Positions 1 through 61,526 of a stretch of 64,000 nt of DNA are shown here, piece by piece. Position 1 is the stretch's first letter, and each line of letters begins with the position of its first letter. The DNA is from Bugula neritina (taxonomy: Eukaryota > Animalia > Bryozoa). The translations under genes were made by a program, and so were the position numbers. Location: assembly GCA_964035545.1 (NCBI GenBank), contig OZ037766.1, positions 6,314,722 to 6,378,721 of the forward strand, in the 5' to 3' direction. Below the pieces are notes generated by a model. The model was not told where the DNA came from. It saw only the letters and a list, made by a program, of their open reading frames with translations, and did not search any database.

Positions 1-1165
1 ATAAGTTTGATCAGAGGTTCTCTGTAACTCACCATTTCTGCAGATTAACCAACTACTTTGATTACTTGCTAGTGAGTATTCCACGCACTGACTGTTTGAA
101 CTGTCATTATCAAATGTTGAAAACAGAAGTTCCACGCCAAGTGAAGCCAACTTTTCCAACTGAACTCGAAAATTAAATTTAGTGGGTTCGTACGAAATTG
201 CTAAGGAATTAAGCAGAGAAATATTTGGCATTACACTAGATCGAAATGTGGATCCCGCAGAATGTTCCCCTGTAACGTAAATGTTCCTTTCGCAGTAGGA
301 ATCTTCTATATCAAATACATTACATCTAATCAAACTCTCTGCAGCACAATGCACACTGTTTACAAACCATTGTAACTCGAAAGATCTACCAATAAACTGC
401 GCATACTTACGCTGACAATCATCACTGGTTACATTTTTGAAACACTGAAAACATTTATCAACTGCATTTTTGGTCGGCAAAGGCAAATATTCAAAGTCTT
501 CTCCACAATGTTTTATTCCATGGTTTGTAATTTTAAACGTTTCTGGTTCATATCTGTTTTTCATACACTTTCCATTTACAAACGGTGTTGAGATGCAGGT
601 TTCTGACTCCAAGTCTAGTATGCTGGAACAGTTACACTGTTTAAGGTGATGACTTATGTTTAAACAAGTGTCTAGAGTCGTGTTGAAATCACTGTATAGC
701 AGCACAGCATCCGAATTCATGTTGCATGTTCGCTCATTCAAATCTATTTCATATATAAATAAAAACTTCATCACATCCTTCTCATACCTTAACCATCTAT
801 CAAATGCATATTCTGATGTTCCAGTAACAACGTCATTTGGTTTAGCATCACATCCAAGCCAAGCCACACCATTACAACTAGCACAGTAGCTGTTCCTATA
901 TTTATTCTTTAGGCCATTACTTGAAATGTTTGTCCCATAACTAGTGCGAATGCTTTCGACTAGAAAAGTATAAGATTTCTTCACTAGGTTTATCAATTCC
1001 CCACCATCATATACAAAGGAGGCAGGGCCATTAGAACACATGTCCGATATTTTCCAATGTTCAGCGTGTTTAGGACAGGAAGCTACATAGTTTGCTGCAT
1101 CAAATTTGCACCTCCGCACTGAGTCTACCAGCTCTAATGGAGGTAAATACTGCTTTATCTTGCAT
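1..1165 (-). CDS. Gene A exon 5 (partial; ectodomain stalk, 7TM lies beyond window)
   Basis: Acceptor ttgcag|A TGC AAG ATA AAG CAG (CKIKQYLPPLELVDSVRRCKF), matching exon 5 of B-F. Confidence 0.88.
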
Positions 1166-4100
1166 CTGCAACCATCGATGAAAAAACTTTAGAGATATAT
1201 TATTAATAAAATATAAAATAATTAATAATCAATTTTTATTGTAGGTCTATTTATATATATATCTATATATAAATAGGTATACGAGAAACATTGCTATTTA
1301 TTACTTTATTAGGTAAAGTAATTACACTGATATTTCGGGTACCACTGTACCCATCTTCAGAGTAGCAATGAATGAAATTCAAAAATTATTATGTTACGTA
1401 TGTTAATAATATATATAATAATTATTAATCAATTTTTATTGTAGGTCTATTTGACTTTTTACACACACGCACTCGCACACACACACACACGCACATGCAC
1501 ACACACACATATATACAGTAAATGTGCCTTTTAAAATTGAAAAGTGATAATAATTATTTTTTACTCAAAACATTGTTTAATATGTTGATGAGTCAGAACA
1601 GCTGTTACATATTATAAAGTTAGTCAAAAGTAATTTTGGGACAGTCACTAGTTGTAGGGCAGCCAAGGCTCCCTAGCTGGTAAACCAGAGACACCCTGAC
1701 TCTACTACTATACGTTGTGAAGTCAGTACGAACAAACTAAATTATATTATACTCATCTTGTTAATTTAAAAATAACTCACTCGCTGCGTTTTAGTTCTGT
1801 TACAGTTGGATTCCCTCGAAATGTATTATGAGGAGAAAATATGTTGTAGCGGAATGATCCTAGAGCAATATTGCAGTTGTCATTAATCACTTGAATGCAG
1901 CCCACGTCTATCCTCCAATAACGGATTTCTTTCACATCATTGCATATTGCACAGTATACATTAGAATATCTATAAATATTATAAACGTGTTTCAAAGTAA
2001 GTGATTTGATAAAACTCTGTACAAGTGAGTCATGGCTCACGTTAGTTTGTTCAGTCAAAGTAAGCTGTTTCCTGAGTCATATCTTTGATAAGATGACTCA
2101 TTCAGTCAATAAGCTTTAAAAACAGCATTAAGCATTGTATAAAAATATCCTGTTGCTAATTGTAATACATTGATTGTGATAAATATATAAGTATACATCG
2201 GAAGTGCTACTGCCAAAACATCTCACTGTTAAATTTCGAATGCCCTAAAACAATTATTTTTGTAACCTCAAAAAGCTTTCATATAACTATAGGTCACTAA
2301 TACTTTAATATATATAATGCTGCAACTGCAATGGTGTTATTAATATTTCATTTATCTTTATCCTTTCTGCTATAGGTTAATTAGGCCTAATCAATGGGTG
2401 GGAACACTGCATGAAATTAAAACTCGATTTTTCTATTAAAATATGCCAATACATTTTTTATGTTGGTTTGCTAATCTCTCATTTTATGATTTATACCTTA
2501 TTCCCGTTTTCAGAGAAGAGACTGGGATATTCTGGTAACAAAACTTTTCATCTTTAGGAGGGTTTTCACATAGACCTTTTATTTCATTGTTGTTATACGA
2601 TTTTGGACAAGCTTCCACTTGCATTATCCCCCATGAATAGCCCTCAGCATCTGCCCCACTTTTTAACTCAGATCTGTCATGCACACAGGAAAATATCCCA
2701 TCTTCTAGGACTGTCTCATTGGTAGGTTGGTACGGTGAATCTTTACAGCAATCATTAAAGTACATACAGTATTTATCACAATAACAATTCAACTCGTGCT
2801 CTTTCTTTATTCCCAACTCTACAGCTTTACATTGACTTTGGTAAGCGCATACTGAGTGTGAGTGCCACTGCAAGTCACTATTGTCTGTCACGATGTTGCT
2901 GACTGAGCCATAAGTGTTCAGATTATAGCACTGCAAAGTGTCAGGGTCAAAAACATGTCCAAATCCACACCCTGGTTTCGTGCACGACTCATCACTCACA
3001 GCTTGTGGTATGAGAAACCGGTCACATATCTTCCTCACGTTGCTAAAACAAGCCATAGATCCCAAGTTCCACACTGGCACAGTGGCAGTGGTTTTAGTCC
3101 CAAAAGAGGTGTTTAGCTGTGTTACGCGCTCTTTACAAAAACTTGCTGCTTGATCTGCAAAGAAAGAGCACTCAAAATCCTCATCAACTTTGAAATTTGT
3201 AAAGTTATTAGAAAAGTCTGTCATGCTGAACATAGTTGGTCTTGCAAACACCAATATTTTGGAGTCGTCTGGTGATGACTGATCTTGTTTTATTTTAAGT
3301 TTATTGCTTTTTTTGTTCCAAAACAATTCCAAGGTTAAGGCAGTCGTTTTTGGCAGTTGAGGTAAATCAATGTCCATTAGTAGAAGATCCACACCATGGC
3401 ACAAGGCACAGAACTGGTTTCGATATACTAGATTAAAATTTGTGATGTTGATATAGTTAACAGATCCTTTCTCACAAAGTGTCTTTAACTCGCTATTAGA
3501 GTTAGTAGGGCACGTCCTCACAGCGTCCCAACACAGATCTGGAGACTCTGGTGGTAAGTACAATGTTTTGCAGGATCTACAGAGTAAAGATCATGATATA
3601 TATTATGCAATAGCCTACTACAATTATAACTACATTATAAAACTCAAAAATTGTAACTATAGTTATTTTTATATTCATTTGCTCTATAATAGGTCATAAT
3701 TATAAAATTTTCATGGTAAATCCTTTATAATCATATATAATGTCAGTTATAAAATCTGCAAAAATAAGATTCATTGTCTGACACTTGTCAAGCTTCAAAA
3801 GTTCTGAAAAGTTTTAACTGTGTAAAAGTTATTTACATTTCACAAAGCTCAAACTGACTGACTGCCCTACTACACGTCAACAAAACTTCTGGCAATGCGT
3901 CTCTTAGTATATATATAGTGGTACTGGATGAACTCTATTACAGATATAGAGTCATGCACTGTCATTAAATTGTCAGTGCAGCCTCTAATCTTAGGAAAGC
4001 AATTTTGAAAAACTATAGCACTGGCAAGCACCGACAGAATATATTAATGATCATGATTATATCATTACTACTAAATGAGTTGATGATGTGCAGAATTAGA

Positions 4101-6148
4101 GTAATGTAAGAATTATACCTGTATTCTAACAAACTACTATGTTACAAAAAAAGTTATATGCTCGTGTGACATTTATAACCTGCTACTTATTAAATTAAAC
4201 TTGAAACAACACAACAACAACAGCAAGAGATAAAGAGAGAGGAGAGAGAAAACTTGAATTGTAAACAAATTATTCTAGGTTTGACTATTATATTGTAAGA
4301 GTTAATGATATATTAAAGTGTGCTAATCATATTTCTTCAATACTCACTCTCTTACTAAATATATTAGGCTTTTGTGGTCAGTATCTGAAGAGAGATATTC
4401 TTCAATAGCCTCAGCACTACACTCCACCTTTGCTGGCCACCATTCCATGGTACTCACACTATCATTTATCTTATTCGGATCACCAAACCATATCTGGTCT
4501 GAAAATTGCACACTTGCCTGAGGATCAATACCATTACACATGGCACAGAAGACGTTCTTATATGTGAGATGATTCACTATACCTCGTACTGGCCAACGTT
4601 TCAGTGATAGATCTACAAATAATGTTATAACATACAGCTGTGTATCTAGTAAGATAGTAAATATGAGTAGGTATTGCATAAGCTTGTTTCTGCTAAACTC
4701 GCTTTACAGTCTTTAAAGTTTACATAGACTACTCTTCTTCATTTGTCTCAGAAGTATATTTTAAAGCTTAGGCAGAAGAAAGCAGTAGTTTATTTATTGC
4801 CTGTGACTTTCAATTTGTTTCCATGGTATCAAAGGAATCCTTACAGATGCCCTAAGCATTACATCAAATTAGAAACCATACATTCAGGTGCAGTTTGTAC
4901 AAAGTTGTTATTTCTTAAAAGAAGACAACTCCTTTTCAACTCTGAAAGCTGTAGGCGCAGAAGGTTACTGAATTATGCAAAATGAATAATGTAAACATAT
5001 AAGCTAGCATTGAGTCAGTGATCACGCCCAACGATGATTTCCACCTTTTGCCTCAGATTTTGTTAGGTGAAATCCATTAGATAAACAAAATCCAAATCAA
5101 GTTTTTTAAAGCAGAAAAGCAATAACTAATAAAAGCTTTATTTACTTTATAAAGCATAAAATAAAGGCTTTAATTAGGAATAAATTAAATTTTCAAAATA
5201 AAAATAGCTGTCAATTTATTGTTAGCCTGAGAATGCTTTAGCTTACAAACAAGTTTTATAGATGTTATATGGTAATTAGCAGTTATCTTAAATAATAGCA
5301 GCTATAAAATAAGTAAATTTTTATGAAATTGTTGAACTGCACTTTAGCAAGGGTGAAAACTTATAGTATATGTTTAAGATTATTGTTTGCATTTTGTGAA
5401 TAGCCGCCACAAATACTGATTTCTACCTTCCTCCCAACAATTTTATTCCATGCAACTGCTTTCAAGCATCAAATGAAAACCCTTCGGCATAACTTCTCTC
5501 GATAAAGTATAGTGCTTGTCACAAAAGATTTCATTAGCAAACTTAGCATCATGCAAAGAGAAAGCTTTTTTGGATAAACCAAAAGTCCATTTACATAATC
5601 CAAAGCTTGGATATGCAACTTATTACGCTGCAGCACTATAACTACCAAAACCCACGCCACATTTCCCAGACCTAGAAGCTTTTTTATTATAAAATCAATT
5701 GTAAGTTATTGAAAACTCATTCTTTTTATTGATGCTTACCAGATTCTGTAGAGCTGAAACTTTCACATAAAGACTTTAGTTCCTTATTTGGAGTTTCCTG
5801 AGGACATTTGTCCACAATGTAGAAGTTATCATGACATGAAAATGTGTTGTAAGCCAACTGCTCCATGGGTTTAGCAGAAGTCATAAGACAGCAGTCCGAA
5901 TAGTACTTACATCTGTTGAAAGAGTGTAACCTGTATTGAAAACATGTCCCATTCACAAGTTCTGTGTTCTCAATATCTTGAGACTTTGATAATAATCCAA
6001 GAGGAATCGTTGTTGGTATTCCATTGAATTTCATGAAGTTTTCTACAGCTCTTGTATCAGCTTGAGAATGTTGCGCTAATATATTGTTTATAAAAGTAAC
6101 TAAAAGTACTACTATAGCTGTTAACCTCTTCAACGTAGTTCTTGACAT
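1..6148 (-). CDS. Gene A: SMB/cysteine-module class-B-like GPCR (5 exons, 3' end outside window)
   Basis: Exons 6148-5740, 4612-4348, 3576-2497, 1969-1781, 1165-<1. All introns GT-AG, phases 1,2,2,2, frame continuous. Paralogous to genes B-F. Confidence 0.88.
1253..1400 (-). mobile_element. Short Penelope-like element remnant carrying the hammerhead
   Basis: ~148-bp segment not seen in paralogous intron 4 copies; flanked by ~52-bp imperfect direct repeats (1201-1252, 1401-1452); minus-strand AATAAA downstream of the ribozyme. Confidence 0.55.
1322..1368 (-). ncRNA. Minimal type I hammerhead ribozyme of Penelope-like element type
   Basis: Minus strand UUGCUACU-CUGAAGA-U-GGGUAC(AGUG)GUACCC-GAAA-UA-UC^AGUGUAA: catalytic core CUGANGA/GAAA/UH, perfect 6-bp stem II, palindromic minimal stem III, ACU/AGU stem I. 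Confidence 0.75.
1461..1509. repeat. (CA)n imperfect microsatellite
   Basis: acacacacgcactcgcacacacacacacacgcacatgcacacacacac. Confidence 0.85.
1781..1969 (-). CDS. Gene A exon 4 (YSNVYCAICND module)
   Basis: tttatag|A TAT TCT ... AGC GA|gtgagt; 189 nt as in paralogs. Confidence 0.88.
2497..3576 (-). CDS. Gene A exon 3 (YRNQFCALCHG module + SMB-like CYCDKYCMYFNDCC)
   Basis: ctgtag|A TCC TGC ... ATA AG|gtataa; 1080 nt; ORF track 2484..3563. Confidence 0.9.
4348..4612 (-). CDS. Gene A exon 2 (TYKNVFCAMCNG module)
   Basis: tttgtag|AT CTA TCA ... AGA GA|gtgagt; 265 nt in all six copies. Confidence 0.9.
5740..6148 (-). CDS. Gene A exon 1 (signal peptide + degenerate SMB-like motif)
   Basis: atcATGtca start conserved in all copies; hydrophobic leader MSRTTLKRLTAIVVLLVTFINNILA; donor TCT G|gtaagc. 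Confidence 0.88.
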
Positions 6149-7968: not shown

Positions 7969-7982
7969 GTTGCCATAGTAAC
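7969..7982. promoter_or_regulatory. RFX X-box-like motif upstream of gene B
   Basis: GTTGCCATAGTAAC ~243 bp upstream of the ATG, at the position homologous to gene A's motif. Confidence 0.6.
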
Positions 7983-8224: not shown

Positions 8225-8633
8225 ATGTCAAGAACTAAGTTGAAGAGTTTTGCAGCTACAGTAGTACTTTTAGCTACTCTTATAAACAATATATTAGCAC
8301 AAGATTCTCAAGCTAATTATAGAGTGGTAGACGACTTCATAAAATTCAATGGAATTCCAACGAGGATTCCTCTTGGATTATTATCAAAGTCTCAAGAGAT
8401 TAAGAACACAGAACTTGTGAATGGGACATGTTTTAAATACGGGTTACACTCTTTCAACAGATGTAAGTACTATTCGGACTGCTGTCTTATGACTTCTGCT
8501 AAACCCATGGAGCAGTTGGCTTACAACACATTTTCATGTCATGATAACTTCTACATAGTGGACAAATGTCCCCAAGAAACTCCGAATAAGGAACTAAAAG
8601 CTTTATGTGAAGATTTCAGTTCCGCAGAGTCCG
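8225..8633 (+). CDS. Gene B exon 1
   Basis: Signal peptide MSRTKLKSFAATVVLLATLINNILA; donor TCC G|gtaagt. An in-frame ATG at 8198 is not conserved in paralogs. Confidence 0.88.
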
Positions 8634-11600
8634 GTAAGTATCGAATATAATATTCAGCAATTACAATAGCCTACTATTTATTCTCTAAAATAATAAGGCT
8701 CTAGGTCTCTAAACTTTAATTGCCAAGTTTGAGAAATGTGGCTTTGATACCGAATTGTTCTGATACTTTATGCTGTATATTAGTAATATGACGTCTGCAA
8801 AATTTCATAAGTCTTTGAGACAAAAGTTATAGAGGAGAAATCAACCTAAACTTTAGAAACTGTGAAGCAAGTTTAGCAGCAGTAACATACTGCACCAGGG
8901 TGTCCAACCTTTTCAGACCAAGCTGGTCACTGAAAAGGAACATTCTGGTGGCGAGAGCCACATTTTAAACTTCAGTTTGAGTTGGGGGCCGCAAAATCAG
9001 TGATTTTTTCAAATTATTTCATTTCAAATTATTATGAATCATTCCTCGATGAAACCCTAATAGTTACTGCAGCTAGGCTGCATGGTTTGTAGCCTGTGTA
9101 AAAATAAGATATCTAAAAGGTGGTTTTTTACTCTAATTCATGCATACATGTGAAAACGTAAATGTAGGCTGGAGGCCACATTCAGTACTGGGGCCGCCTG
9201 TTGTGCAGTCCTGTACTACACAATACCCATATTTATACCATCTTACTAGCTACACGGTTGTATATGTTATAACATTATTTGTAGATTTATCACTGAAACG
9301 CTGGCCAGTACGAGGTCTAGTAAATCATCTCACATATAAGAATGTCTTCTGTGCCATGTGTAATGGTGTTGATCCTCAGGCTAATGTGCGATTTTCGGAC
9401 CAGATATGGTTTGGTGATCCAAATAAGATAAATGATAGTGTGAGTACCATGGAATGGTGGCCAGCAAAGGTAGAGTGTAGTGCTGAGGCTATTGAAGAAT
9501 ACCTCTCTTCAGATACTGACCACAAAAGTCTAATAGCTCTAGTAAAAGAGTGAGTATTAAAGGATTGAGGTTAATAAACTTCAATATTATCACATTACAA
9601 GAAACTTCATAATGGTGTTGCATACATTTCAAGCGTTATTTTATTTCTCTCTCAACCTTTTCCTTTTTTCCCCAAACTTTCATCATTGCTGTCACAAGAG
9701 CATAGCTTCTTTTGCAAAAATTGAGTTTGCTTAAACATGCACAGGTATTTTAACATTACTCTAATTCTGCACATATGGTAATCTTATTCAACCGTAATAA
9801 TATCATCATGATCATGAATATAATTGTGTAAATTTGACATAAGGTTTCTTTTTTAACTGTATATATAAAGGCTGTATCATAAAAGAGAGGGTAGTAGTTC
9901 TTCATCATGTATGATGGCTTTGAAAAGTCATATGCTAATATTCAGCTTATAAGAATTATATAATTATTTCGTACAATTGCCAGTGCTAAACAGCTTTTAT
10001 AATTTTTAAAATTGCCTTGCTAAATTTAGAGGCAGCACTGACAATGTAATAACTTCACAGTGCTACTAGAGTCATGGGATGATGTCATGCCTGTTATAGA
10101 ATTTACACACTATCATTAGAAGCTAACAGACATTGCTAACAAATCTGCTAATGTAATAATATCAATACCTGCCGTTTCAGCTGTCTAAAGGGTACACAAT
10201 GCAGTTAACATATTTCAGAATTTTTAAAACTTGATCAAAATTGTACAATGCGTGTATTATTTTTTAGGGTTTTACAATTTACTTTATGATATGGAGAATT
10301 TACTTAGCTGTGTCCCATCATGAAAATTATATAAAATTTATCATCTATTGGCGATCAATGAATATAAATGCAACTAGGCTAGTGATATTTTTTAGTTTTA
10401 TAATGTAGTTGTAATTGTAGTAGGCTATTGTATAATATATATCGTGATCTTTACTCTGTAGATCTTGCAAGACATTATACTTACCACCAGAGTCTCCAGA
10501 TCTATGTTGGGACGCTGTGAGGACGTGCCCTACTAACTCTAATAGTGAGCTAAAGACACTTTGTGAGAAAGGACCTGTCAACTATATCAACATCACAAAT
10601 TTAAATCTAGTATATCGAAACCAGTTCTGTGCATTGTGTCATGGTGTGAATCTTCTACTAATGGACATTGAGTTACCTCAACTGCCAGAAATGACTGCCT
10701 TAACAATGGAATTGCTTTGGGACAAAAAAAGCAATAAACTTAAAATATATCAAGTTTCATCCTCCTTAGACAACTCAAAGACATTGATGTTTGCAAGACC
10801 AACTATGTTCAACTTGACAGACTTTTCTAATAACTTTACAACTTTCAAAAGTAATGTGGACTTTGAGTGCTCTTTTTCCGCAAATCTAACAGCAAGTTAT
10901 TGTAATGAACGTGTAACACAGCTAAACGGTTTTCCTAGAACTAATACCATTACTGTGCCAGTGTGGAACTTGGGATCCATGGCTTGTTTTAGCAACGTGA
11001 GGAAGATATGTGACCGGTTTCTCATACCACAAGTTGTCAGTGATGAGTCATGCACAGAATCAGGGTGTGGATTTGGACATGTTTTTGACCCTGACACTTT
11101 GGAGTGCTATAATCTGAACACTTATGGCTCAGTCAGCAACATAGTCACAGACAACAGTGATTTGCAGTGGCACTCACACTCAGTATGCGCTTATCAAAGT
11201 CAATGTAAAGCTGTAGAGTTGGGAATAAAGAAAGAGCATGAGTTGAATTGTTATTGTGATAAACACTGTAGGTACTTTAATGATTGCTGTGAAGATTCAA
11301 CGTACCAGTCTAACAATCAGACAGTCCTAGAAGATGGGACATTTTCCTGTGTGTATGACAGATCTGAGTTGAAAAGTGGAGCAGATGATGAGGGCTATTC
11401 ATGGGGCATAATGCAAGTGGAAGCTTGTCCAAAATCGTATAACAACAGTGAAATAAAAGATCTATGTGAAAACCCTCTCAAAGATGAAAAGTTGAGTTAC
11501 CAAAATATCCCAGTCTCTTCTCTGGTTACTGGATTAAGGTATGTTGGTTTCACATTATAACATTTTATGTAATATAAAATGCAGCTCTATAGAAATGGTA

Positions 11601-16169: not shown

Positions 16170-16280
<111 letters not shown>

Positions 16281-37111: not shown

Positions 37112-37114
<3 letters not shown>

Positions 37115-37146: not shown

Positions 37147-37148
<2 letters not shown>

Positions 37149-45028: not shown

Positions 45029-45030
45029 TA

Positions 45031-45980: not shown

Positions 45981-45983
45981 GTA

Positions 45984-48792: not shown

Positions 48793-48822
48793 GAACATAC
48801 CCTTCTTCATCTATGATTGCAG

Positions 48823-50905
48823 ATGCGAGATAAAGCAATATTTACCTCCCTTAGAGCTGGTAGATTCAGTACGAAGGTGCAAATTTGATGCAGCAAACTA
48901 TGTAGCTTCATGTCCCAAACATGCTGAGCATTGGAAAATATCGGACATGTGTTCTAATGGCCCCGCCTCCTTTGTATATGATGGTGGGGAATTGATAAGT
49001 CTAGTGAAGAAATACTACTCTTTTCCAGTCAACAGCATTGGCACTAGTTATGGGACAAGTATTTTGAGTTATGGCCAAAAGAATAAATATAGGAACAGCT
49101 ATTGTGCTAGTTGTAATGGTGTGGCTTGGCTTGGATGTGATGCAGAACCAAATGTTATTGTTACTGGAACATCAGAATATGCATTTGATAGATGGTTAAG
49201 GTACCAGAAGTATGTGATGAAGTTTTTGTTTGTTTATGAAATAGATTTGAATGAGCGAACATGCAACATGAATTCGGATGCTGTGCTGCTATACAGCGAT
49301 TTCAACACAACTCAAGACACTTGTTTAAACATAAGTCACCACCTTAAACAGTGTAACTGTTCCAGCATACTAGACTTGGAGTCAGAAACATGTATCCCAA
49401 CACCGTTTGTAAATGACAAGTGCAGAGAGAACAAATATGAACCAGAAACATTCAAAGTTACAAACCATGGAATAAAAAATTGTGGAAAAAACTTTGAATA
49501 TTTACCTTTGTCTACTCAGGTTGCAGTCGATAAATGCTTTCAGTGTTCCATAAATGTAACAGGTGATGATTGTCGGCGTGAGTTTGAGCAGTTCACTGGT
49601 AGCCCTGATGTAGTTGTAAACTCTGTAAACAGTGTGCATTGTGCTCTAATTGCTTTGATTAGATGTAATGTATCTGATATAGAAGATTCCTATTGTGCAG
49701 AAGATTTTGGTCAATTCGGATTATCTTCTGGCACTTTTGGTGAAGAGATAACTCCAAAAATTTCTCTGCTAAATTCCTTAGCAATTTCGTATCAATCAAC
49801 CGAATTTAATTTTGAAGTTTACTTGGAAAAGTTGGCTTCACTTGGCGTGAAACTTTTGTTTTCAACATTTAATAACGAGAGTTTAAACAGTCAATGCGTT
49901 GAATACTCACTAACAAGTAATCAAACTAGTTGGTTAATCTGCAGAAATGGTGAGTTACAGAGAACCTCAGATCAAACTCATTACGATGACTACTTATTGT
50001 GGAATGATGAGATACGAGTATGCACTAAAACTGCTGTACCAGAATTTGTTCTTGCAACTCACGACTACATCTTTTCTTCATTATCCATTCTGTTCATCCT
50101 GATCTATGTTGCTTATTATTTTACAAAATTAAAAAAGACTGTGACAGGTAACTTTGTAGTCAGTTCTATGATTACACTGATGTTTGGATTAGTGTTTTAC
50201 TGCCTCATCAATGAGACAAAATTTTTCATATCTTGTCGGATCATTGCTTCCTGTACACAATACTTCCTTATTGCTGTACACACCTGGACAAATGCTGTTG
50301 GAATTTTAATGATAAAAGGCATTTCCTCTTTCAAACTTGCTAGTCAATCGAGCTGGAAAAAGTATGCTTATTATGCTGCATATGCCTGGCTCACCCCACT
50401 CATATTTGTAATAATTGCTTACTCTCTTGATGCAACTAAACCTCACAGTCTATACCCAGTGTTTTCTGATCAAATTTGCTTTATTGCTCGTGGGTGGATA
50501 AGACTATTAGTTTTCACTGGACCCATATATTTATTAGTGGTGGTAAACGTTACCATGTGTATTATAGCAAGTGTCATTGTAGCAAAGTCAGGAAATAAAA
50601 TAGCTGTTGATGACAAGCAAAGAACTCTGAAGAAAGTGGTTACCATTGTTAAACTCCAAGTAATTTTTGGATTTGAATGGTTTTTGCTTCTTTTTACTGA
50701 AATCAAAGGTCCTCACCAGACTGGCCTATGGATTGCTCTCAATGTGTTTATGACATTACAAGGAGTACTAGCAGTGTTAGCCCAGTTAGTTACTTCTGCA
50801 AACATTAGAAAATGCATGAACTGGTTTAATTCAAAGATTAGAAATCATAGTCCTAAGAATTCACAAAGTGCCTCAAACAAAACTGTTGAAACTGAGTTTC
50901 ACTAA
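48823..50905 (+). CDS. Gene E exon 5 (module 4, stalk, 7TM)
   Basis: ttgcag|A TGC GAG; ORF track 48791..50905. Confidence 0.85.
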
Positions 50906-54310: not shown

Positions 54311-54716
54311 ATGTCAAGGACTAAGTTGAAGAGCTTTGCAGCTACAGTAGTACTTTTAGCTACTCTTATCAACAATATATTAGCACAGGATTATTTAGCT
54401 AAGGTAATTTTAGAAAACTTCATGAAATTCAATGGAATACCAACAAAGATTCCTCTTGGATTATTATCAGAATCTAAAGATATTGAGAACATAGAACTCG
54501 TGAATGGGACATGTTTTCAATATGGGGTGCACTCTTTCAACAGATGTAAGTACTATTCGGATTGCTGCCTTATGATTTCAGCTAAACCCATGGAGCAGTT
54601 GGCTTACAACACATTTTCATGTCATGATAACTTCTACATAGTAGACAAATGTCCCCAGGAAACTCCAAATAAAGAACTAAAGTCTTTATGTGAAGGTTTC
54701 AGCCCCACAGAGTCTG
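54311..54716 (+). CDS. Gene F exon 1
   Basis: atcATGtca; donor TCT G|gtaagc. Confidence 0.88.
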
Positions 54717-57700
54717 GTAAGCTTCTCATAGCTTACTAGCTATGCTATGTTACAACTAGACTACTAGCTCCTTGTCTCCTAATTATAAATGTAAGATTTA
54801 GCAAATGTGGCTTTGACATCATGAGGGTTTGCTAGTTTGTGCTGCAGCTTAATAGTAATGTGCAATTAAAAGTATTCATTGGCATGAGCTGCTGTTTTCT
54901 TTTGCCTCAGCCTTATAAATTTCTGAGTCAAAAGAAGAAGAGTAGTCCATATGTACTTTAAAAACTGTAATGCAAGTTTAGCAGAAACAACATACTACAC
55001 AATATTCATATTTACCATCTTACCAGCTACACAGTTGTATATTATACCATTATTTGTAGATCTATCACTGAAACGTTGGCCAGTACGAGGTCTAGTGAAT
55101 CATCTCACATATAAGAATGTCTTCTGTGCCATGTGTAATGGTATTGATCCTCAGGCTAGTGTGCGATTTTCGGACCAGATATGGTTTGGTGATCCGAATA
55201 AGATAAATGATAGTGTGAGTACCATCGAGTGGTGGCCAGCAAAGGTAGAGTGCAGTGCTGAGGCTATTGAAGAATATCTCTCTTCAGATACTGACCACAG
55301 AAGCCTAATAACTCTAGTAAAAGAGTGAGTATTAAAGAACTAAGGTTAATAAATCTCACTGCTTGAACAGATATCAACTCCATTATGAATTCATTTGCAT
55401 TTCTAGCTTTTTATCTCGCCACTTCTCCTCTGTCCTCTCCTGCCCTCTTTCTCGCCTTCTCTTCTCTCTCTCCCCCCCCTTTCTCCCTCCACTCCTCCTC
55501 TTTCTCTTGTTGTTTCAAGTTTAGTTTGGATAGCAGGTTGGAACTGTCGCAGGAGCATAGCTTCTTTTGCAAAAAAGTAATTTCCTAGAAGATGTATGTA
55601 TTTTGACATTCATCTGATTCAGCACTATGCATGGACATCCCATTGAGCAGAAATCCCATGATCATGATCATTAATGGTCATGGATTGAATTTGACATAAA
55701 CTTCTTTTCTTAAGCTATGAATTATTTTATTTAACCAGAATGTGGGTAAGCTTGTAGTGGGTTCAAGCTAGATCTATAAGGTATATAAAAGGCTGTTTCA
55801 TAAAAATCTATGATGGTGATGCTGCATAACCTGTGATGAGTTTTAACAGCCATGCATATTATGCTAGTATTCAGCTTCCCTGAAGAACTATATAATATTC
55901 AATTTTCTCACACTTCTCTCAGTGTTTGCCAGTGGTGAATAGCTTCTATAGTCTTTGAAATAGGCTTATTTGTTGAATTCAGAGATAGCATTGACCGAAT
56001 AATAGCGTTACAGCGCTCTAAAAGTCATAAAATATGGTATGCGTGACTCCATACCTGTAGATTTTACACCCTACTGTCATAGAAATTAAGAGACAATGCC
56101 AGCAGCTCTGCTAATGTAGTGCTATCAATGCCTGAGCACTGCGGTTTCAGCTTTCAAGAATGTAAATAACTTTTACATTTATCATGGAAATGATATGATC
56201 ATAACCTATTAGAGCACAATCAATATAAATAAAGCTGTTAACACTTTTTGAGTTTTATAGTACAGCTATTATAAAATTTAAAGTGTTGTTTAAAAAAAAT
56301 ATCATCTTCTTTATTCTGTAGATTCTGCAAGACATTATACTTACCCCCAGAGTCTCCAGATCTGTGTTGGGACGCTATGAGGAAGTGCCCTAACAACTCC
56401 AACAGAGAGTTAAAGACACTTTGTGAGAAAGGACCTGTCAACTATATCAACATCACAAGTTTAAACTTAGTATATCGAAACCAGTTCTGTGCCTTGTGTC
56501 ATGGTGTAGATCTTCTACTGGTGGACATTGACTTACCCCAACTGCCAAAGTGGAATGCCTTAACATTGGAATTGTTTTGGGACAAAAAAAACAATAAACT
56601 TAGAATAAATCAAGATCTGTCATCACCAGACGACTCAAAGACATTAATGTTTGCAAGACCAACTATGTTCAACTTGACAGACTTTTCTAATAACTTTACA
56701 AATTTCAAAGTTGATGAGGATTTTGAGTGCTCTTTTTTTGCAGATCAAACAGCAAGTTATTGCAATGAGCGTGTAACACAGCTAAGCAGTTTTTCTGGAA
56801 CTAATACCACCACTGTGCCAGTGTGGAACTTGGGCTCCATGGCATGTTTTAGCAATGTGAGGAAAATATGTGACCGGTTTCTCATACCACAAGTTGTGAG
56901 TGATGACTCTTGTACGGAATCAGGGTGTGGATTTGGACATGTTTTTGACCCTGACACTTTGCAGTGCTATAATCTGAACACTTATGGCTCCGTCAACAAC
57001 ATAGTGACAGACAACAGTGACTTGCACTGGCACTCACACTCAGTATGCGCCTACCAAAGTCAATGCAAAGCTGTAGAGTTGGGAATAAAGAAAGAGCACG
57101 AGTTGAATTGTTATTGTGATAAATACTGTATTTACTATAATGATTGCTGTGAAGATTCACCGTACCAACCTACCAAACAGACAGTCCTAGAAGATGGAAC
57201 ATTTTCCTGTGTGTATGACAGATCTGAGTTAAAAAGTGGTGCAGATGCTGAGGGCTATTCATGGGGGATAATGCAAGTGGAAGCTTGTCCAAAATCGTAT
57301 AACAACAGTGAAATAAAATATCTATGTGAAAACCCTCTTAAATACAAAAAGTTAAGTTATCAAAATATCCCGGTCTCTTCTCTGGATACTGGAATAAGGT
57401 AATCAGGTACTGTATAATAGAATATACTATAAAATAAGCGCTAATAGAAAAATTAATAAATTTTATTAGCACAATTAGATAAACTAAAAGTTTTGAGCTG
57501 GTTACTAATTTACTGAAGTCAGATTTTACAATGCACAGATAACTAGGTTTTCATGCAGTGTACACTGGATAACGGTAATTTGGTTTTTCATTATAAAATA
57601 TACAATAAAGTGAGAGCTTAATAAAAAAATTATCAGCACATTTTGATGAACTAAATATTTCGAGTTAGTTAATTATTTTACTGAACACAACACATACAGA

Positions 57701-60700
57701 ACTATAGGTTTCTGCGTAGTGTTCTCACATGCTGATTAATGAGCATATAGCAGGGAGGAAAATATGGATAAAGAAATGAATAACACTATCTCAATATAAG
57801 GTCAAATATTATATTTAAGAGCATCGATAAAGAGTGTATGACAGTAAATTAGAGTAGTACGAGAGCTTTTATGATGTTATGAAGAAGAATAATGGTTGGA
57901 GTGTAAGAGATTAAACAGTGAGTGAATTTGTGGCAATTCGGCACTGCATATATACTGTATCAAAATCAGTAGAATATAATTAGCAACAAGATGTTTTCAT
58001 AAGATATTTTATGCTTTTTGTAAAAGTTTATTGAATAAATGAGTCACCGTCACAAAGACTTACTCATAAACCAGCTAGCTTAAATTACAGTGAATAAAAT
58101 CAGTGAACTATGACTCACTTGTTGTACCTATCAAATGTCACTATAGGTTTAAATTTTTTTATAATATTTACAGATACTCCAACTTATACTGTGCAATATG
58201 CAATGATGTCAAAGAAGTGCGTTATTGGAGGGTAGATGTTGGTTGTCTTAATGTGGCTAATGACAAGTGCAATTATGCTCCAGAATCAGTCAGCCAAGAA
58301 ATACTTTTTCTTTCTAATATATTATTCCGGAAGAATCCAACCGCAATAGAACTAAGATACAGCGAGTGAGCTATTTTTAGATTAACGTGATGAGTATAAT
58401 ATAATTTAGTTTATTCATATTGACTCCAAAACATGTATAAGTAGTATAGTGAAAGTGTCTCTGGTCTATCAGGTACTGTGATTCTCCTACAACTACCTTT
58501 GACTAACTTTATAGTATGTAATAGCTGTTCTGACCGATTAACGTAATTCAGTAGAAATTTGTTGAATACTCTTGGGCTTTCCTTACTATTTATCACTATA
58601 TTTTGAGTCAACGAAGTGCGTATGTGAGCTGCTAAAATAGCTTAAAGTAAATGCAGGTAAATGGCTTGTCCGAGCCTGCTAACTGTACAGAAGCTCGGGA
58701 GTATGTAGTTCTTTGCTAAGCTCGAGTTTACAATTTTCTGTTTAGGTTTTATTTCATAGACTGACAATGATATGGATATTTACTAATAACATTGTGCAAT
58801 TCTGCAGGTAACTCAGCTAATTTTAGGTCACAAGGCATGATACAGCTGCTTTATTTGTCATTCAGACTTGAATGACATAAGAATTAAGAAATTAATGTAG
58901 TTATAAGTCACAAACAGTACTCTGTGGAATTTTAAACTCATTTAAAAACTGCTCATACTCATGCAAATGCAGAAGTTGAACAAGTTGAGCAAATGACACA
59001 ATAATTATAGTTTCTAATAAAATTTATTGAATCTGCTGTAAAAAGGGTTATGAAAAAGATGGTACTTTTGCAAGGCATGAACTACCCTGCATAAAGCTGT
59101 GACGTCATCACAACCATTAAAAAAATTGAGCTATTTGCTGTTTAGCTGTGTAATCAAGCTTTTCTGTCACTCCTTGCATATTTTTTTGTAATAGATAAGT
59201 TTAATTTTAGAAGAATCAAGTTTCAGACAGGTGCTGCTTTTTGTCTTTTTCAGCAGCCAACTTAGACTAGAACACTTTTTGTCTATTAGTAATGTCAGTC
59301 CATAATGCAACTATACCTGTGTATAGAAACAATTAGACTTGATGAAAATATAGACCAATAAGCTACTTTAAATGCATTCTTTGTGGTTGAATGTGCTTGT
59401 TGAAAATAGTTGTGAATAATTATTGCTCTGTGACACAAAACTAAATGTTCTTCTTCATCTATGATTGCAGATGCGAGATAAAGCAATATTTACCTCCATT
59501 AGAGCTGATAGATTCAGTACGAAGATGCAAATTTGATGCAGCAAACTATGTAGCTTCATGTCCTAAACACGCTGAATATTGGAAAATAGCTGACATGTGT
59601 TTGAATGGCCCCGCCTCCTTTGTATATGATGGGGGATTCTTGAGGAGTCTAGTAAAGAAATCTTATTCTTATCCAACCAAAAGCATTCGCACTAGTTATG
59701 GAGCAGATATTTTGAGTTATGGTCAAGATAATAAATATAGGAACAGCTACTGTGCTAGTTGTAATGGCGTTGCCTGGCTTGGATGTGATGCAAAACCAAA
59801 TGATATTGTTACTGGAACATCAGAATATGCATTTGATAGATGGTTAAGGTACAAGAAGGATGTGGTGAAGTTTTTGTTTATTTATGAAATAGATTTGAAT
59901 GAGCGAACATGTAACATGAATTCGGATGCTGTGCTGCTATACAGTGATTTCAACACAACTCAAGACACTTGTTTAAGCATAAGTCACCACCTTAAACAGT
60001 GTAACTGTTCCAACATACTAGACTTGGATTCAGAAACCTGCATCCCAACACCGTTTGTAAATGAGAAGTGTAGAGAGAACAGATATGAACCAGAAACATT
60101 CAAAGTTACAAACCACGGAATAAACCACTGTGGAAAAGGCTTTGAATACTTACCTTTGTCTACTCAGATTGCAGTTGGTAAATGTCTTCAGTGTTCCATA
60201 AATGTAACAGGTGATGATTGTCAGAATGAGTTTGAGCAGTTCACTGGTAGTCCTGATGTAGCTGTAAACTCTGTAAACAGTGTGCATTGTGCTCTAACTA
60301 ATTTGATTAGATGTAATGTACCTGATATAGAAGATTCCTATTGTGCAGTAGATTTAAAAGAGTCTGGCTTATCTTCTGGCAGTACTGGTAATGCGATAAC
60401 TCCTAAGATTTCTCTGCTTAATTCCTTAGCAATTTCGTACGAACCGACTAAATTTAACTTTCAAGTTCAGCTAGAAAAGTCCACTTCACTTGGCGTGGAA
60501 CTTCTGTTTTCAACGTTTAATAATGACAGTTTAAACAGTCAGTGCGTGGAATACTCACTAACAAGTAACCAAACTAGTTGGCAAATCTGTAAAAATGGTG
60601 AGTTACAGAGAACCTCTGATCAAACTCATTACTATGACTACTTATTGTGGAACGATGAGATACGAGTCTGCACCGAAACTGCTGTACCGGAATTTGTTCT

Positions 60701-61526
60701 CGCAACTCATGACTACGTCTTTTCTTCTTTATCTATTCTGTTCATTTTGATCTACGTTGTTTATTATTTTACAAAGTTAAAAAAGACAGTGACAGGGAAC
60801 TTTGTAGTCAGTTCTATGATTACACTGATGTTTGGATTAGTGTTTTACTGTCTCATCAATGAGACGAAATCTTTCATATCTTGTCAAATCATTGCTTCTT
60901 ATACACAATACTTCCTTATTGCTGTACACACCTGGACAAATGCTGTTGGAATTTTAATGATAAAAGGCCTTTCCTCTTTCAAACTTGCCAGTCAATCTAG
61001 TTGGAAAAAGTATGCCTATTATGCTGCATATGCCTGGCTCACTCCACTCATATTTGTAATAATTGCCTACTCTCTTGATGCAGCTAAACCTCACAGTCTA
61101 TATCCAGTGTTTTCTGATCAAATTTGCTTTATTGCTCGTGGATGGATAAGACTATTAGTTTTCACTGGACCCATATATTTATTAGTGGTGGTAAACATTA
61201 CCATGTGCATTATAGCAAGTGTCATTGTAGTAAGGTCAGGAAACAAAATAGCAGTTGATGATAAGCAAAGAACTCTGAAGAAAGTGATTACAATTGTTAA
61301 ACTCCAAGTAATTTTTGGATTTCACTGGTTTATTCTACTCTTTACTGAAATCAAAGGTCCTCACCAGACTGGCTTATGGATTGCTCTCAATGTGTTTATG
61401 ACATTACAAGGAGTACTAGCAGTGTTAGCCCAGTTAGTTACTACTGCAAATATTACGAAAGCTAGAACATGGTTTAATTCAAAAGTGAGACATCCTAGCC
61501 CTAAGTGCCTCAAACAAAACTGCTGA
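54311..61526 (+). CDS. Gene F: intact SMB/cysteine-module class-B-like GPCR, ~1331 aa
   Basis: Exons 54311-54716, 55060-55324, 56322-57398, 58174-58365, 59471-61526 = 3996 nt, in frame, GT-AG introns. Confidence 0.92.
55060..55324 (+). CDS. Gene F exon 2
   Basis: tttgtag|AT CTA ... AAA GA|gtgagt. Confidence 0.9.
56322..57398 (+). CDS. Gene F exon 3
   Basis: ctgtag|A TTC TGC ... ATA AG|gtaatc. Confidence 0.9.
58174..58365 (+). CDS. Gene F exon 4
   Basis: ttacag|A TAC TCC ... AGC GA|gtgagc. Confidence 0.9.
59471..61526 (+). CDS. Gene F exon 5 (module 4, stalk, 7TM)
   Basis: ttgcag|A TGC GAG; ORF track 59445..61526. Confidence 0.92.

What the first reader, a model, noticed from the sequence alone, without database searches (positions are those of the whole stretch)
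1..61526. Tandem array of giant SMB/cysteine-module class-B GPCRs with constant scaffold and hypervariable ectodomain patches
Seen: six paralogs with near-invariant stretches (SFNRCKYYSDCCLMTSAKPMEQLAYNTFSCHDNFYIVDKCPQE; QWHSHSVCAYQSQCKAVELGIKKEHELNCYCDK) alternating with patches that differ in almost every copy. Example after DSYC: A ERNIYVTGEHSAGSTFRSSVMP, B TNRTFVSGSSSATSKFQFSIIP, C LVDFGQFGLSSGTFGEKITP, F AVDLKESGLSSGSTGNAITP. The middle of exon 4 and the start of exon 5 are similarly variable. Known: the 7TM motifs fit the secretin/Methuselah/adhesion class, but no GPS motif precedes TM1. Inference: a birth-and-death receptor repertoire with diversified ligand-binding surfaces (chemosensory, settlement-cue, immune or allorecognition), with an ectodomain architecture I cannot assign to a named gene.
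Basis: partly seen in the sequence, partly recalled or inferred. Interest (0 to 1): 0.8.

Follow-up and report, generated by a model that had tools for sequence, protein, structure and literature searches.

The report
Bryozoan Methuselah-like receptor gene cluster
A bryozoan chromosome carries eight neighbouring genes for very large Methuselah-like (class B) G-protein-coupled receptors with a doubled, cysteine-rich outer part and one fast-evolving patch; this is a local expansion of a widespread but unstudied receptor family, not a new kind of receptor.

Summary
The window has six paralogues of a 5-exon gene encoding about 1,325-1,341 aa. A is inverted and cut by the window start; B-F are on the + strand. 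The cluster really has eight copies, plus one on another chromosome and four distant paralogues.

Exons are 88-96% identical and introns 63-75%. Spliced contigs from RNA-type runs confirm three of the four junctions.

Only 7tm_2 passes Pfam, and there is no GPS, GAIN, HormR or Methuselah_N. The ectodomain is not unassignable. It is the Pfam 38.1 DUF8401 type with an SMB-like CxCDxxCxxxxDCCxD motif, found with 7tm_2 in annelids, molluscs, chelicerates, crustaceans and insects. That matches the Somatomedin_B-bearing Mth/Mthl receptors described in 2016. Bryozoans have duplicated the ectodomain unit internally.

Birth-and-death is supported:
- D has a TAG at codon 26.
- E carries two identical 1.7-kb transposon insertions.
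- Nearest neighbours switch along the gene, indicating gene conversion.

Diversifying selection is only suggestive. Exon-wide dN/dS is 0.2-0.4. One of 12 segments (exon 5, codons 237-354) favours omega about 2 at roughly a third of sites. The p-value is 8e-5 with one tree and 0.005 with recombination-aware trees. AlphaFold cannot model that patch.

Verdict: a new bryozoan variant of a known receptor kind, of moderate interest.

The parts
1..6148 (-). Gene A, apparently intact. Exons: 6148-5740, 4612-4348, 3576-2497, 1969-1781, and 1165 to beyond the window start (a further 867 nt in L008). Encodes 1,324 aa.
8225..14795 (+). Gene B, intact, 1,340 aa. Exons: 8225-8633, 9285-9549, 10462-11538, 12164-12352, 12713-14795. 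7tm_2 lies in exon 5, with TM1 starting near 13953.
   Evidence: An earlier doubt about the exon-2 acceptor was removed by the spliced contigs.
18845..26012 (+). Gene C, intact, 1,340 aa. Exons: 18845-19250, 19561-19825, 20910-21989, 22747-22935, 23930-26012.
   Evidence: Junctions 19250|19561, 21989|22747 and 22935|23930 are seen in spliced contigs of RNA-type runs.
29416..35736 (+). Gene D. All exons are open apart from an in-frame TAG at codon 26 (29491-29493; CAG in copy F). Probably a recent pseudogene.
29491..29493 (+). Premature stop codon (TAG) in the signal-peptide region of gene D.
40526..50905 (+). Gene E, disrupted by two transposon insertions. The reading frames are otherwise open.
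43313..45028 (+). A 1.72-kb non-autonomous DNA transposon inside exon 3 of gene E, between the Y and F of CMY|FNDCC. It has 24-26-nt terminal inverted repeats (CCGTAAAATGGGGTAACATTGGCC) and a TA target duplication.
45984..47699 (+). A second copy of the same transposon, identical to the first. It sits at position +3 of the intron-4 donor of gene E and changes it to GTACCG.
54311..61526 (+). Gene F, intact, 1,331 aa. Exons: 54311-54716, 55060-55324, 56322-57398, 58174-58365, 59471-61526. It is 94% identical to the public Bugula neritina protein EB796_011943.
24639..24974 (+). Fast-evolving ectodomain patch: exon 5 codons 237-354, shown here for copy C. Homologous spans: A 115-456 (minus strand), B 13422-13763, D 34360-34704, E 49532-49867, F 60180-60515. 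Invariant cysteines and motifs (VHC, LIRCNVSDIEDSYC, ISL.N..AISY) are interleaved with variable loops.
   Evidence: pLDDT is below 40 in the model.
21631..21780 (+). SMB-like cysteine module in exon 3 of copy C (C-x5-C-x14-C-x-C-D-x2-C-x4-D-C-C-x-D). The same module is in every copy, at 11165-11300 in B. A degenerate first copy lies in exon 1 (SFNRCKYYSDCC).
7969..7982 (+). Conserved palindromic RFX X-box-like motif, GTT(A/G)C(C/T)AT(G/A)G..A., about 150-250 bp upstream of the ATG in all nine close copies. Positions: A 6374-6387, B 7969-7982, C 18677-18690, D 29242-29255, E 40348-40361, F 54154-54167.
   Evidence: It is absent upstream of the distant paralogues.

Best explanation
The window covers most of an eight-gene tandem cluster in a bugulid bryozoan (Bugula neritina complex or a close relative). 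Two copies are on the minus strand and six on the plus strand. Each gene encodes a class B GPCR of about 1,340 aa belonging to the Methuselah-like, DUF8401-type family.

Each protein has four parts:
- A signal peptide.
- A roughly 1,050-residue ectodomain with about 60 cysteines and 12-22 N-glycosylation sequons.
- A small beta-rich membrane-proximal domain.
- A 7tm_2 bundle. There is no GAIN/GPS autoproteolysis domain.

In other animals the canonical family ectodomain is one SMB-like knot followed by two modules. Each module has a CP...LC stretch followed by the motif Y-(K/R)-N-x-x-C-A-x-C-N. Cheilostome bryozoans have duplicated this unit inside the protein. That gives four modules and roughly doubles the size.

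Shown: the cluster evolves by duplication, gene conversion between copies and occasional loss. D carries a nonsense codon and E carries two fresh transposon insertions. The scaffold and 7TM are under purifying selection, with omega 0.2-0.4.

Shown with moderate support: one cysteine-framed stretch of about 118 residues, just outside the membrane-proximal domain, evolves at omega about 1 on average. A mixture model puts about a third of its codons at omega about 2.

Inferred: the proteins are cell-surface receptors. An extracellular ligand bound to the cysteine-rich ectodomain is transmitted to the 7TM bundle and then to a heterotrimeric G protein. The several copies offer related but non-identical binding loops.

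Not shown: the ligand, the coupling and the cell type.
For: Copies and models:
- Six copies lie in the window with all quoted peptides.
- Eight copies form the cluster, with one more on contig C1 and four distant paralogues sharing the same five-exon layout.
- All splice sites are canonical and every CDS length is a multiple of 3.
- Spliced contigs from RNA-type runs of four studies lie on exons only. They show junctions 1|2, 3|4 and 4|5 at the predicted bases.

Family:
- 7tm_2 at E 9.5e-14. The 7TM is modelled at pLDDT above 90 and matches adhesion and secretin receptor 7TMs.
- The closest public protein, EB796_013872, carries PF00002 and PF28443.
- A profile search gave 2,041 relatives at E <= 1e-3. 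The relatives of 500 aa or more, inspected, mostly show the SMB-like motif, up to two Y-K/R-N-x-x-C-A-x-C-N modules and 7tm_2.
- Named relatives come from Watersipora, Limulus, Halocaridina (UniRef name 'Mth2'), Owenia, Paralvinella, Mercenaria, Sinanodonta, Gryllus, Nymphon and Littorina.
- de Mendoza 2016 reports Somatomedin_B on non-arthropod Mth/Mthl homologues.

Internal duplication:
- Pairwise BLASTP between exon 1 and the exon 3 C-terminus gives E 3e-6. Exon 3 N-terminus against exon 5 N-terminus gives 1e-5. Exon 2 against exon 4 gives 2e-4.
- Watersipora proteins of 1,085-1,157 aa show the same doubled layout.

Birth-and-death and gene conversion.

Selection:
- NG86 dN/dS per exon is 0.20-0.38.
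- Of 12 a-priori segments, only exon 5 codons 237-354 rejects M1a (2dlnL 18.97, p 7.6e-5, omega2 2.2, 29% of sites). The 7TM segments serve as negative controls, p 0.15-1.0.
- With three separate trees, 2dlnL is 10.78, p 0.0046, omega2 1.96, 35% of sites.
Against: - Membership of the Mth/Mthl clade was not tested with a tree that includes Drosophila Mthl sequences, because none could be obtained. It rests on the published description, on automatic names and on shared architecture.
- PF28443 is not in the local Pfam copy. The DUF8401 assignment is indirect: precomputed hits on the 85%-identical public protein and on relatives, plus an Atlas feature match of 0.94.
- SMB is below Pfam's threshold.
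- The RNA contigs are only 95-99% like copy C. Expression is therefore shown for the family, not for any one copy, and the tool labels 'RNA' as a guess.
- The selection signal weakens when recombination is modelled. It would not survive Bonferroni correction in that form (about 0.055).
- Pairwise omega exceeds 1 in only 14 of 36 pairs.
- The patch is unmodelled (pLDDT below 40), so it may be a loosely structured stalk.
- Two of the six window copies are disabled.
Confidence: 0.72

Rival explanations
1. The variable patches are not adaptive. They are weakly constrained, poorly structured, glycosylated stalk loops drifting at close to the neutral rate. Gene conversion shuffles a few old sequence types among copies, which mimics hypervariability and inflates site-model tests.
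For: - The patch averages omega about 1: M0 gives 0.39-0.71 per sub-segment, and pairwise values run 0.45-1.75 with 14 of 36 above 1.
- Variants fall into about three types rather than one per copy.
- Breakpoints inside the segment improve AICc by about 40.
- The LRT drops from 18.97 to 10.78 when separate trees are allowed.
- pLDDT is below 40 for residues 251-354.
- A distant paralogue on C6 lacks the region altogether.
Against: - M2a still beats M1a at p = 0.0046 with recombination-aware trees. In that fit the neutral class is emptied in favour of omega about 2.
- None of the other 11 segments is significant after correction; the closest is exon 1 at p 0.028 uncorrected, and the equally conversion-prone 7TM segments give p 0.15-1.0.
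- The patch keeps invariant cysteines and motifs between the variable loops, so it is a structured scaffold rather than a free linker.
Confidence: 0.4
2. The array encodes sensory receptors of ciliated cells, for example larval cells that sample the substrate before settlement. They would be transcribed under RFX control and use diversified loops to recognise environmental or conspecific cues.
For: - A palindromic X-box-like motif is a conserved island 150-250 bp upstream of the ATG in all nine close copies, including the one on another chromosome, while flanking promoter sequence has diverged.
- Perfect matches number 15 on both strands against 0.70 +/- 0.98 expected.
- A second conserved X-box lies in a promoter-like block with CCAAT and TATAAAA in each intergenic region.
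- The patch shows modest evidence of positive selection.
- Another reader noted X-boxes at other GPCR paralogues of this genome (s1-453765; unchecked).
Against: - The sites are paralogous, so their number is not independent evidence.
- No X-box was found upstream of the four distant paralogues.
- With one mismatch allowed the count is not above chance: 24 against 18 +/- 5.
- No tissue or stage information could be obtained.
- RFX binding was not tested.
Confidence: 0.15
3. The genes are adhesion GPCRs with a divergent, unrecognised GAIN/GPS domain and tethered-agonist activation.
For: The nearest solved 7TM structures are adhesion GPCRs such as ADGRL2, CD97, ADGRD1 and ADGRG2. One relative is annotated 'Adhesion G protein-coupled receptor L3' in Nymphon.
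Against: - No Pfam GPS or GAIN hit at E <= 0.1, and no CxCxHL(T/S) or HL(T/S)xF string in any of nine copies.
- The confidently modelled segment before TM1 is a beta domain of only about 50 residues.
- Secretin-family 7TMs match almost as well.
- The ectodomain of a canonical relative finds no GAIN structure. Its best matches are the Methuselah ectodomain and Kazal-like folds, at Z about 3 or below.
Confidence: 0.03
4. The array is a decaying block of non-functional duplicates.
For: D has a premature stop, and E has a transposon in an exon and another at a splice donor.
Against: - Six of the eight cluster copies, and the copy on C1, have complete open frames and canonical splice sites.
- dN/dS is 0.2-0.4 against intron divergence of 25-37%.
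- Spliced contigs exist.
- The two lesions look very recent: the rest of D is open, and the two insertions in E are identical to each other.
Confidence: 0.04

Closest known systems
Non-arthropod Methuselah/Methuselah-like (Mth/Mthl) class B GPCRs carrying a Somatomedin_B ectodomain (Nematostella XP_001628572, Branchiostoma XP_002608881, Saccoglossus XP_006821924; de Mendoza, Jones & Friedrich 2016, PMC4768249)
   Same: - 7tm_2 bundle with no GPS and no Methuselah_N domain.
- An SMB-type cysteine knot at the N-terminal side.
- A family described as prone to lineage-specific expansions and losses.
- Some relatives found here carry automatic 'Mth' or 'Mth2' names.
   Different: - Bryozoans were not sampled in that study.
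- Here the SMB match is sub-threshold.
- The ectodomain unit is duplicated, giving about 1,340 aa against 650-900 aa.
- The genes sit in an eight-copy tandem cluster with gene conversion.
- Clade membership was not tested here with Drosophila references.
Pfam DUF8401 (PF28443) + 7tm_2 proteins of protostomes. The nearest full-length ones are the Watersipora subatra uncharacterised proteins XP_067949616, XP_067948531 and XP_067947983
   Same: - The same modules: SMB-like CxCDxxCxxxxDCCxD; CP...LC followed by Y-K/R-N-x-x-C-A-x-C-N; an EGF-like stalk; a beta domain; and 7tm_2.
- The Watersipora proteins share the doubled ectodomain.
- They form the sister group of the bugulid clade in a quick tree (SH-aLRT 100 for the bryozoan clade).
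   Different: - No member has a known ligand or function.
- Identity outside bryozoans is only about 20%.
- The bugulid genes have an extra stretch of about 250 residues between module 4 and the membrane-proximal domain. That stretch contains the fast-evolving patch.
Drosophila Methuselah (Mth), ectodomain structure 1FJR
   Same: - A class B 7TM without GPS, with a disulfide-rich ectodomain.
- The mth/mthl genes also expanded in tandem in their lineage.
- 1FJR is the first-ranked Foldseek match of the canonical relative's ectodomain.
   Different: - That match is not significant: E 0.16, and VIA Z 3.1 over 43 residues.
- Pfam Methuselah_N does not hit.
- The ectodomain here is five times larger and is built from other modules.
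Adhesion GPCRs (ADGRL, ADGRE, ADGRG and others)
   Same: A large modular ectodomain, and the best structural matches for the 7TM.
   Different: No GAIN/GPS domain or motif, so no tethered-agonist mechanism is expected.

Membership tests
Class B (secretin/adhesion/Mth) GPCR | A seven-helix bundle matching Pfam 7tm_2 | tested here: met
   PF00002 at E 9.5e-14, 51.7 bits against a cut-off of 20.6, residues 437-668 of the exon-5 product. The AlphaFold 7TM has pLDDT above 90. Foldseek gives E about 1e-8 to ADGRL2, CD97, PTH1R and GLP1R.
Adhesion GPCR | A GAIN domain with a GPS cleavage motif immediately before TM1 | tested here: not met
   No Pfam GPS or GAIN hit at E <= 0.1. No CxCxHL(T/S) or HL(T/S)xF string in nine copies. 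Only a beta domain of about 50 residues precedes TM1 in the model.
Secretin-type receptor | An N-terminal hormone-receptor (HormR/HRM) domain | tested here: not met
   No Pfam hit on any exon at E <= 0.1.
Methuselah sensu stricto | The Methuselah_N ectodomain (PF06652) | tested here: not met
   No Pfam hit. Structural similarity of a canonical relative to 1FJR is weak: Foldseek E 0.16, Z 3.1.
Mth/Mthl superfamily (7TM-defined clade of de Mendoza 2016) | The 7TM groups with Drosophila Mthl1/5/14/15 and their metazoan homologues rather than with adhesion or secretin receptors | not tested
   No Drosophila Mthl sequence could be obtained. The last word search returned only the query. Indirect support comes from the SMB-bearing, GPS-less architecture matching the paper's description and from automatic names 'Mth2' and 'Mth' on relatives.
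DUF8401 (PF28443, Pfam 38.1) | A match to the PF28443 model | tested here: inconclusive
   The model is absent from the local Pfam copy. Precomputed PF28443 hits exist on EB796_013872, which is 85% identical to copy D exon 5, and on 18 of 19 relatives. The Atlas nearest clusters for exon 3 carry DUF8401, with a feature score of 0.94.
Somatomedin B domain | The eight-cysteine SMB knot recognised by PF01033 | tested here: inconclusive
   17.8 bits against a cut-off of 23.1, E 0.004. Vitronectin SMB is the top PDB sequence hit, but at E 0.13. The CxCDxxCxxxxDCCxD core is present in exon 3 and is degenerate in exon 1.
Birth-and-death multigene family under diversifying selection | Tandem duplicates with pseudogenes, plus sites with dN/dS above 1 after allowing for recombination | tested here: inconclusive
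   Duplicates and pseudogenes are shown. For omega above 1, M2a against M1a gives p 7.6e-5 with one tree and p 0.0046 with three trees, which is about 0.055 after correction for 12 segments.

The most novel reading that the evidence does not exclude
The cluster is a bryozoan chemoreceptor repertoire. These would be Mth-like receptors expressed in ciliated sensory cells under RFX (X-box) control. Their cysteine-framed, positively selected loops would recognise settlement, microbial or conspecific cues. That would make class B Mth-like/DUF8401 receptors a previously unrecognised sensory receptor family of lophotrochozoans.
Probability: 0.12. Interest if true: 0.7.

Novelty: new variant of a known kind. 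Interest (0 to 1): 0.42.

Why it matters
- It gives a full-length gene model for a receptor family that public Bugula annotation splits. The deposited proteins EB796_013872 and EB796_011943 are of the size of exon 5 and match it alone.
- It links the uncharacterised Pfam family DUF8401 to the Methuselah-like class B receptors.
- It shows that cheilostome bryozoans doubled the ectodomain and then amplified the gene in tandem.
- Bugula is a standard model for larval settlement and biofouling. A locally amplified surface-receptor family with one fast-evolving loop region and a conserved X-box-like promoter element is a concrete candidate set for cue receptors.
- In itself, though, a lineage-specific class B GPCR expansion is a common pattern. 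Such expansions are already reported for this family in insects, Daphnia, Capitella, Crassostrea and sea urchin.

Tried and rejected
- **Suspected frameshift in copy B.** I first suspected a frameshift at the exon-2 acceptor of B, from an extra 2 nt and a lost AG upstream of LFVDLS. Spliced contigs show that the real acceptor is TTTGTAG|AT, which is conserved in all copies, so B is intact.
- **Word-based protein searches.** The search with exon 5 found only three bugulid fragments. The search with an insect relative returned only itself. Neither says anything about absence.
- **Fold searches on the canonical ectodomain model** (pLDDT 81) gave no convincing fold. Foldseek had no hit at E <= 0.001, and VIA-align gave a best Z of 3.3. 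The module fold therefore stays unassigned.
- **Mapping variable sites on a structure** failed because the patch is modelled at pLDDT below 40.
- **Rfam** found nothing in the window at gathering thresholds. It found no hammerhead at E <= 1 around 1322-1368.
- **Pfam on transposon and MITE ORFs** found nothing.
- **X-box search upstream of the four distant paralogues** was negative.
- **Literature searches** for 'DUF8401', and for 'Methuselah-like' together with 'somatomedin B', returned nothing.
- **Joined exons.** All searches, folds and selection tests were done exon by exon, by reference. Protein lengths were obtained by arithmetic on exon coordinates.
- **Copy E in the codon alignment.** Inside a script only, the transposon and one copy of its target-site duplication were left out of E's exon 3 so that E could stay in the alignment.

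Full report
**Scope and constraints.** All protein searches, folds and selection tests were done exon by exon, by reference. Protein lengths come from arithmetic on exon coordinates.

**Observation.**
- Stop-to-stop frames and a six-way alignment show five coding blocks per copy.
- Across a whole-unit DNA alignment the coding blocks are 88-96% identical and the sequence between them 63-75%. The copies are therefore old enough for introns to have diverged while exons are held.
- All splice sites are canonical. Intron 1 is phase 1 (G|GTAAG ... TTTGTAG|AT). Introns 2-4 are phase 2 (GA|GTGAGT or AG|GTA ... TGYAG|A or TAYAG|R).
- Every CDS length is a multiple of three, giving 1,324-1,341 aa.
- Gene spans: A 6148 to below 1 on the minus strand (exon 5 continues 867 nt beyond the window), B 8225-14795, C 18845-26012, D 29416-35736, E 40526-50905, F 54311-61526.

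**Extent of the family.**
- A six-frame search of the assembly (216 Mb; the window is C2:6314722-6378721) finds two more copies flanking the window. Z lies upstream on the minus strand and G downstream on the plus strand.
- One copy of 73% identity lies on contig C1.
- Paralogues of 33-41% identity with the same five-exon layout lie on C3, C5 (two) and C6.
- The cluster is thus Z(-) A(-) | B C D E F G(+), about 84 kb, with A and B head to head.

**Organism.**
- The best public matches are Bugula neritina hypothetical proteins, which cover only exon 5. EB796_011943 is 94% identical to F and EB796_013872 is 85% identical to D.
- In a quick ML tree these two pair with F and D (SH-aLRT 99 each) inside a 100%-supported clade of the nine close copies.
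- The duplications therefore predate the split between the two genomes.
- The D pair is more diverged than the pairs formed by the C5 paralogues and their public counterparts.

**Transcription and splicing.** Contigs from four RNA-type runs of four studies were laid on 19100-25099.
- They lie on the predicted exons and not on introns, apart from one repeat.
- Some contigs skip 19250->19561 (GT..AG), 21989->22747 and 22935->23930, exactly the predicted junctions 1|2, 3|4 and 4|5.
- The contigs are 95-99% like copy C and some clearly come from paralogues. This shows that the family is transcribed and spliced as modelled, not that copy C itself is.
- The tool marks 'RNA' as a guess, but intron-less joints at GT..AG argue for RNA.
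- This result corrected my first guess at the exon-2 acceptor and removed a suspected frameshift in B.

**What the protein is.**
- Pfam recognises only 7tm_2, in exon 5 (E 9.5e-14). There is no GPS, GAIN, HormR or Methuselah_N, and no GPS-like string in any copy.
- The exon-5 product of C folds with a confident 7TM (pLDDT above 90) and a small beta domain at residues 355-404.
- The 7TM matches adhesion and secretin receptor structures about equally.
- The ectodomain carries about 60 cysteines and 12-22 N-X-S/T sequons.
- It contains four copies of a module ending in Y-(K/R/S)-N-x-x-C-A-x-C-(N/H). These are YKNVFCAMCNG in exon 2, YRNQFCALCHG in exon 3, YSNVYCAICND in exon 4 and YRNSYCASCNG in exon 5. 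Each is preceded by a CP...LC stretch.
- It also contains two SMB-like knots. The one in exon 3 is clear (C-x5-C-x14-CxCDxxCxxxxDCCxD). The one in exon 1 is degenerate.
- Somatomedin_B scores 17.8 bits, below the 23.1 cut-off (E 0.004). Vitronectin SMB domains are the top three PDB sequence hits, but at E 0.13 or worse. 'SMB-like' is fair; 'SMB' is not demonstrated.

**Relatives.**
- The Atlas places exon 3 next to clusters carrying PF28443 (DUF8401, Pfam 38.1), some with Somatomedin_B, mostly molluscan.
- A profile of exon 5 from 12 paralogues, searched against 1.84 billion representatives, found 2,041 proteins at E <= 1e-3. This search was justified because the novelty claim rests on absence of relatives.
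- After bugulid sequences come Watersipora subatra proteins of 1,085-1,157 aa. Then come proteins of 650-900 aa from Limulus, Halocaridina (UniRef name 'G-protein coupled receptor Mth2'), Owenia, Paralvinella, Mercenaria, Sinanodonta, Gryllus, Nymphon and Littorina.
- Most of the hits of 500 aa or more inspected share one architecture: the SMB-like CxCDxxCxxxxDCCxD motif near residue 60, up to two Y-K/R-N-x-x-C-A-x-C-N modules near 150 and 260, an EGF-like stalk, a beta domain and 7tm_2.
- Their precomputed Pfam content is PF00002 + PF28443.
- This matches de Mendoza et al. 2016. They define an ancient Mth/Mthl family by its 7TM and find Methuselah_N only in arthropods. They find Somatomedin_B on homologues from Nematostella, Branchiostoma and Saccoglossus, and note repeated lineage-specific expansions.
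- I could not bring Drosophila Mthl sequences into the session, so clade membership is inferred, not tested.

**What is particular to bryozoans.**
- The canonical unit (SMB-like knot, module, module) occurs twice. Exons 1-2 plus the start of exon 3 form the first unit. The end of exon 3, exon 4 and the start of exon 5 form the second.
- The halves are detectably similar: BLASTP E 3e-6, 2e-4 and 1e-5 for the three pairs of parts.
- Watersipora proteins have the same doubled layout, so the duplication predates the split of these two cheilostomes.
- All bryozoan sequences form one clade against the other phyla sampled.
- A model of a canonical relative's ectodomain (pLDDT 81) has no convincing solved counterpart. 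The Methuselah ectodomain 1FJR ranks first in Foldseek but at E 0.16, and gets Z 3.1 over 43 residues. Kazal-like folds get Z 2.1-2.6 on module 2.

**Birth, death and conversion.**
- D has TAG for CAG at codon 26 (29491-29493) and is otherwise open.
- E carries two copies, identical to each other, of a 1.72-kb element with 24-26-nt terminal inverted repeats and TA target duplications. One lies in exon 3 (43313-45028). The other lies at +3 of the intron-4 donor (45984-47699), leaving GTACCG.
- That element has at least 30 full-length copies at 97-100% identity in the genome. Both lesions look recent.
- Nearest neighbours change along the gene. For example, D is closest to F in exon 1 (2% divergence), to A and then B in exon 3, and to Z/B in the exon-5 patch.
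- Some 'invariant' stretches also have low synonymous divergence (pS 0.04-0.13). Both point to gene conversion.

**Selection.** I wrote a codon-model likelihood program (GY94-type, F3x4, pruning, all branch lengths optimised). I applied it to nine copies (Z, A-H) with segment-specific ML trees.
- Nei-Gojobori dN/dS per exon is 0.20-0.38.
- I cut the CDS into 12 segments fixed in advance. M2a beats M1a only for exon 5 codons 237-354: 2dlnL 18.97, p 7.6e-5, omega2 2.2 at 29% of sites.
- Exon 1 gives p 0.028. All other segments, including the three 7TM segments, give p of 0.05 or more.
- Splitting that segment improves AICc by about 40, a sign of internal breakpoints.
- With three sub-partitions, each with its own tree and shared omega parameters, 2dlnL falls to 10.78. 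That gives p 0.0046, or about 0.055 after correction for 12 tests, with omega2 1.96 at 35% of sites.
- Pairwise omega in the patch core is 0.45-1.75, above 1 in 14 of 36 pairs.
They fall into three sequence types rather than one per copy.
- The patch is modelled at pLDDT below 40, so exposure on one surface could not be assessed.
- My reading: the patch is clearly released from the constraint that holds the rest of the protein. Positive selection on about a third of its codons is plausible but not secured.

**Promoters.**
- A palindromic X-box-like motif, GTT(A/G)C(C/T)AT(G/A)G..A., forms a conserved island 150-250 bp upstream of the ATG in all nine close copies. That includes the copy on C1, and the flanking sequence has diverged.
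- Perfect matches to GTHNYYATRRNAAC number 15 against 0.70 +/- 0.98 expected. The sites are paralogous, however.
- With one mismatch the count is not above chance.
- The four distant paralogues have none.
- A second perfect X-box lies in a conserved intergenic block with CCAAT and TATAAAA about 1.8-2.2 kb upstream of C, D, E, F and G.
- This is a lead towards expression in ciliated cells, nothing more.

**Verdict.** This is a bryozoan-specific, internally doubled and tandemly amplified variant of the Mth-like/DUF8401 class B receptor family. Function, ligand and cell type are unknown. A receptor role with diversified binding loops is the most likely mechanism, but it is inferred.

Noticed in passing
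window 22290-22645 (intron 3 of gene C): A MITE-like repeat of about 350 bp with terminal inverted repeats of about 75 bp. There are at least 864 first-look candidates in the genome, and scored copies are 97-99% identical. It has enormous summed depth in the RNA-type contig runs, up to about 1.9e5.
   Followed up: partly
window 43313-45028 and 45984-47699: A 1.72-kb non-autonomous DNA transposon with a TA target duplication and the terminal repeat CCGTAAAATGGGGTAACATTGGCC. It has at least 30 full-length copies at 97-100% identity genome-wide, so the family is recently or currently active. Its short ORFs have no Pfam match.
   Followed up: partly
window 17078-17091, 27491-27504, 38735-38748, 52408-52421, 62676-62689: An identical perfect X-box (GTTGTCATGGTAAC) lies in each intergenic region, at the end of a conserved block of about 150 bp. 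The block also holds TGAGGTCA, CCAAT and TATAAAAAC. It may be an upstream promoter or non-coding first exon for the next gene, or a separate transcript.
   Followed up: partly
By eye, CUGAAGA, a 6-bp helix GGGUAC/GUACCC and GAAA are present. Rfam cmscan reports no hammerhead at gathering thresholds, nor at E <= 1 on 1200-1500.
   Followed up: partly
public proteins EB796_013872, EB796_011943, EB796_014993 (Bugula neritina): The deposited gene models appear to be incomplete. In tblastn, EB796_013872 and EB796_011943 match only exon 5 of genes that have five exons here. EB796_014993, at 647 aa, is likewise only about exon-5 size. The full architecture is therefore missing from the public annotation.
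   Followed up: partly
G000 contig C7, 8519440-8724946: Five further 7tm_2 matches (28-30% identical to the 7TM here) lie within about 205 kb. Each has one in-frame TAG inside the match. This may be another class B receptor cluster, and the TAG may mark an intron or a shared feature.
   Followed up: no
window 16049-16285; L008 6459-7544; L007 1019-1400: Long (TA)n/(TATG)n-type microsatellites, read as YIYIYI... frames, recur in the intergenic regions of the cluster and near paralogues.
   Followed up: no
This suggests recent gene conversion or constraint at the nucleotide level, not protein constraint alone.
   Followed up: partly
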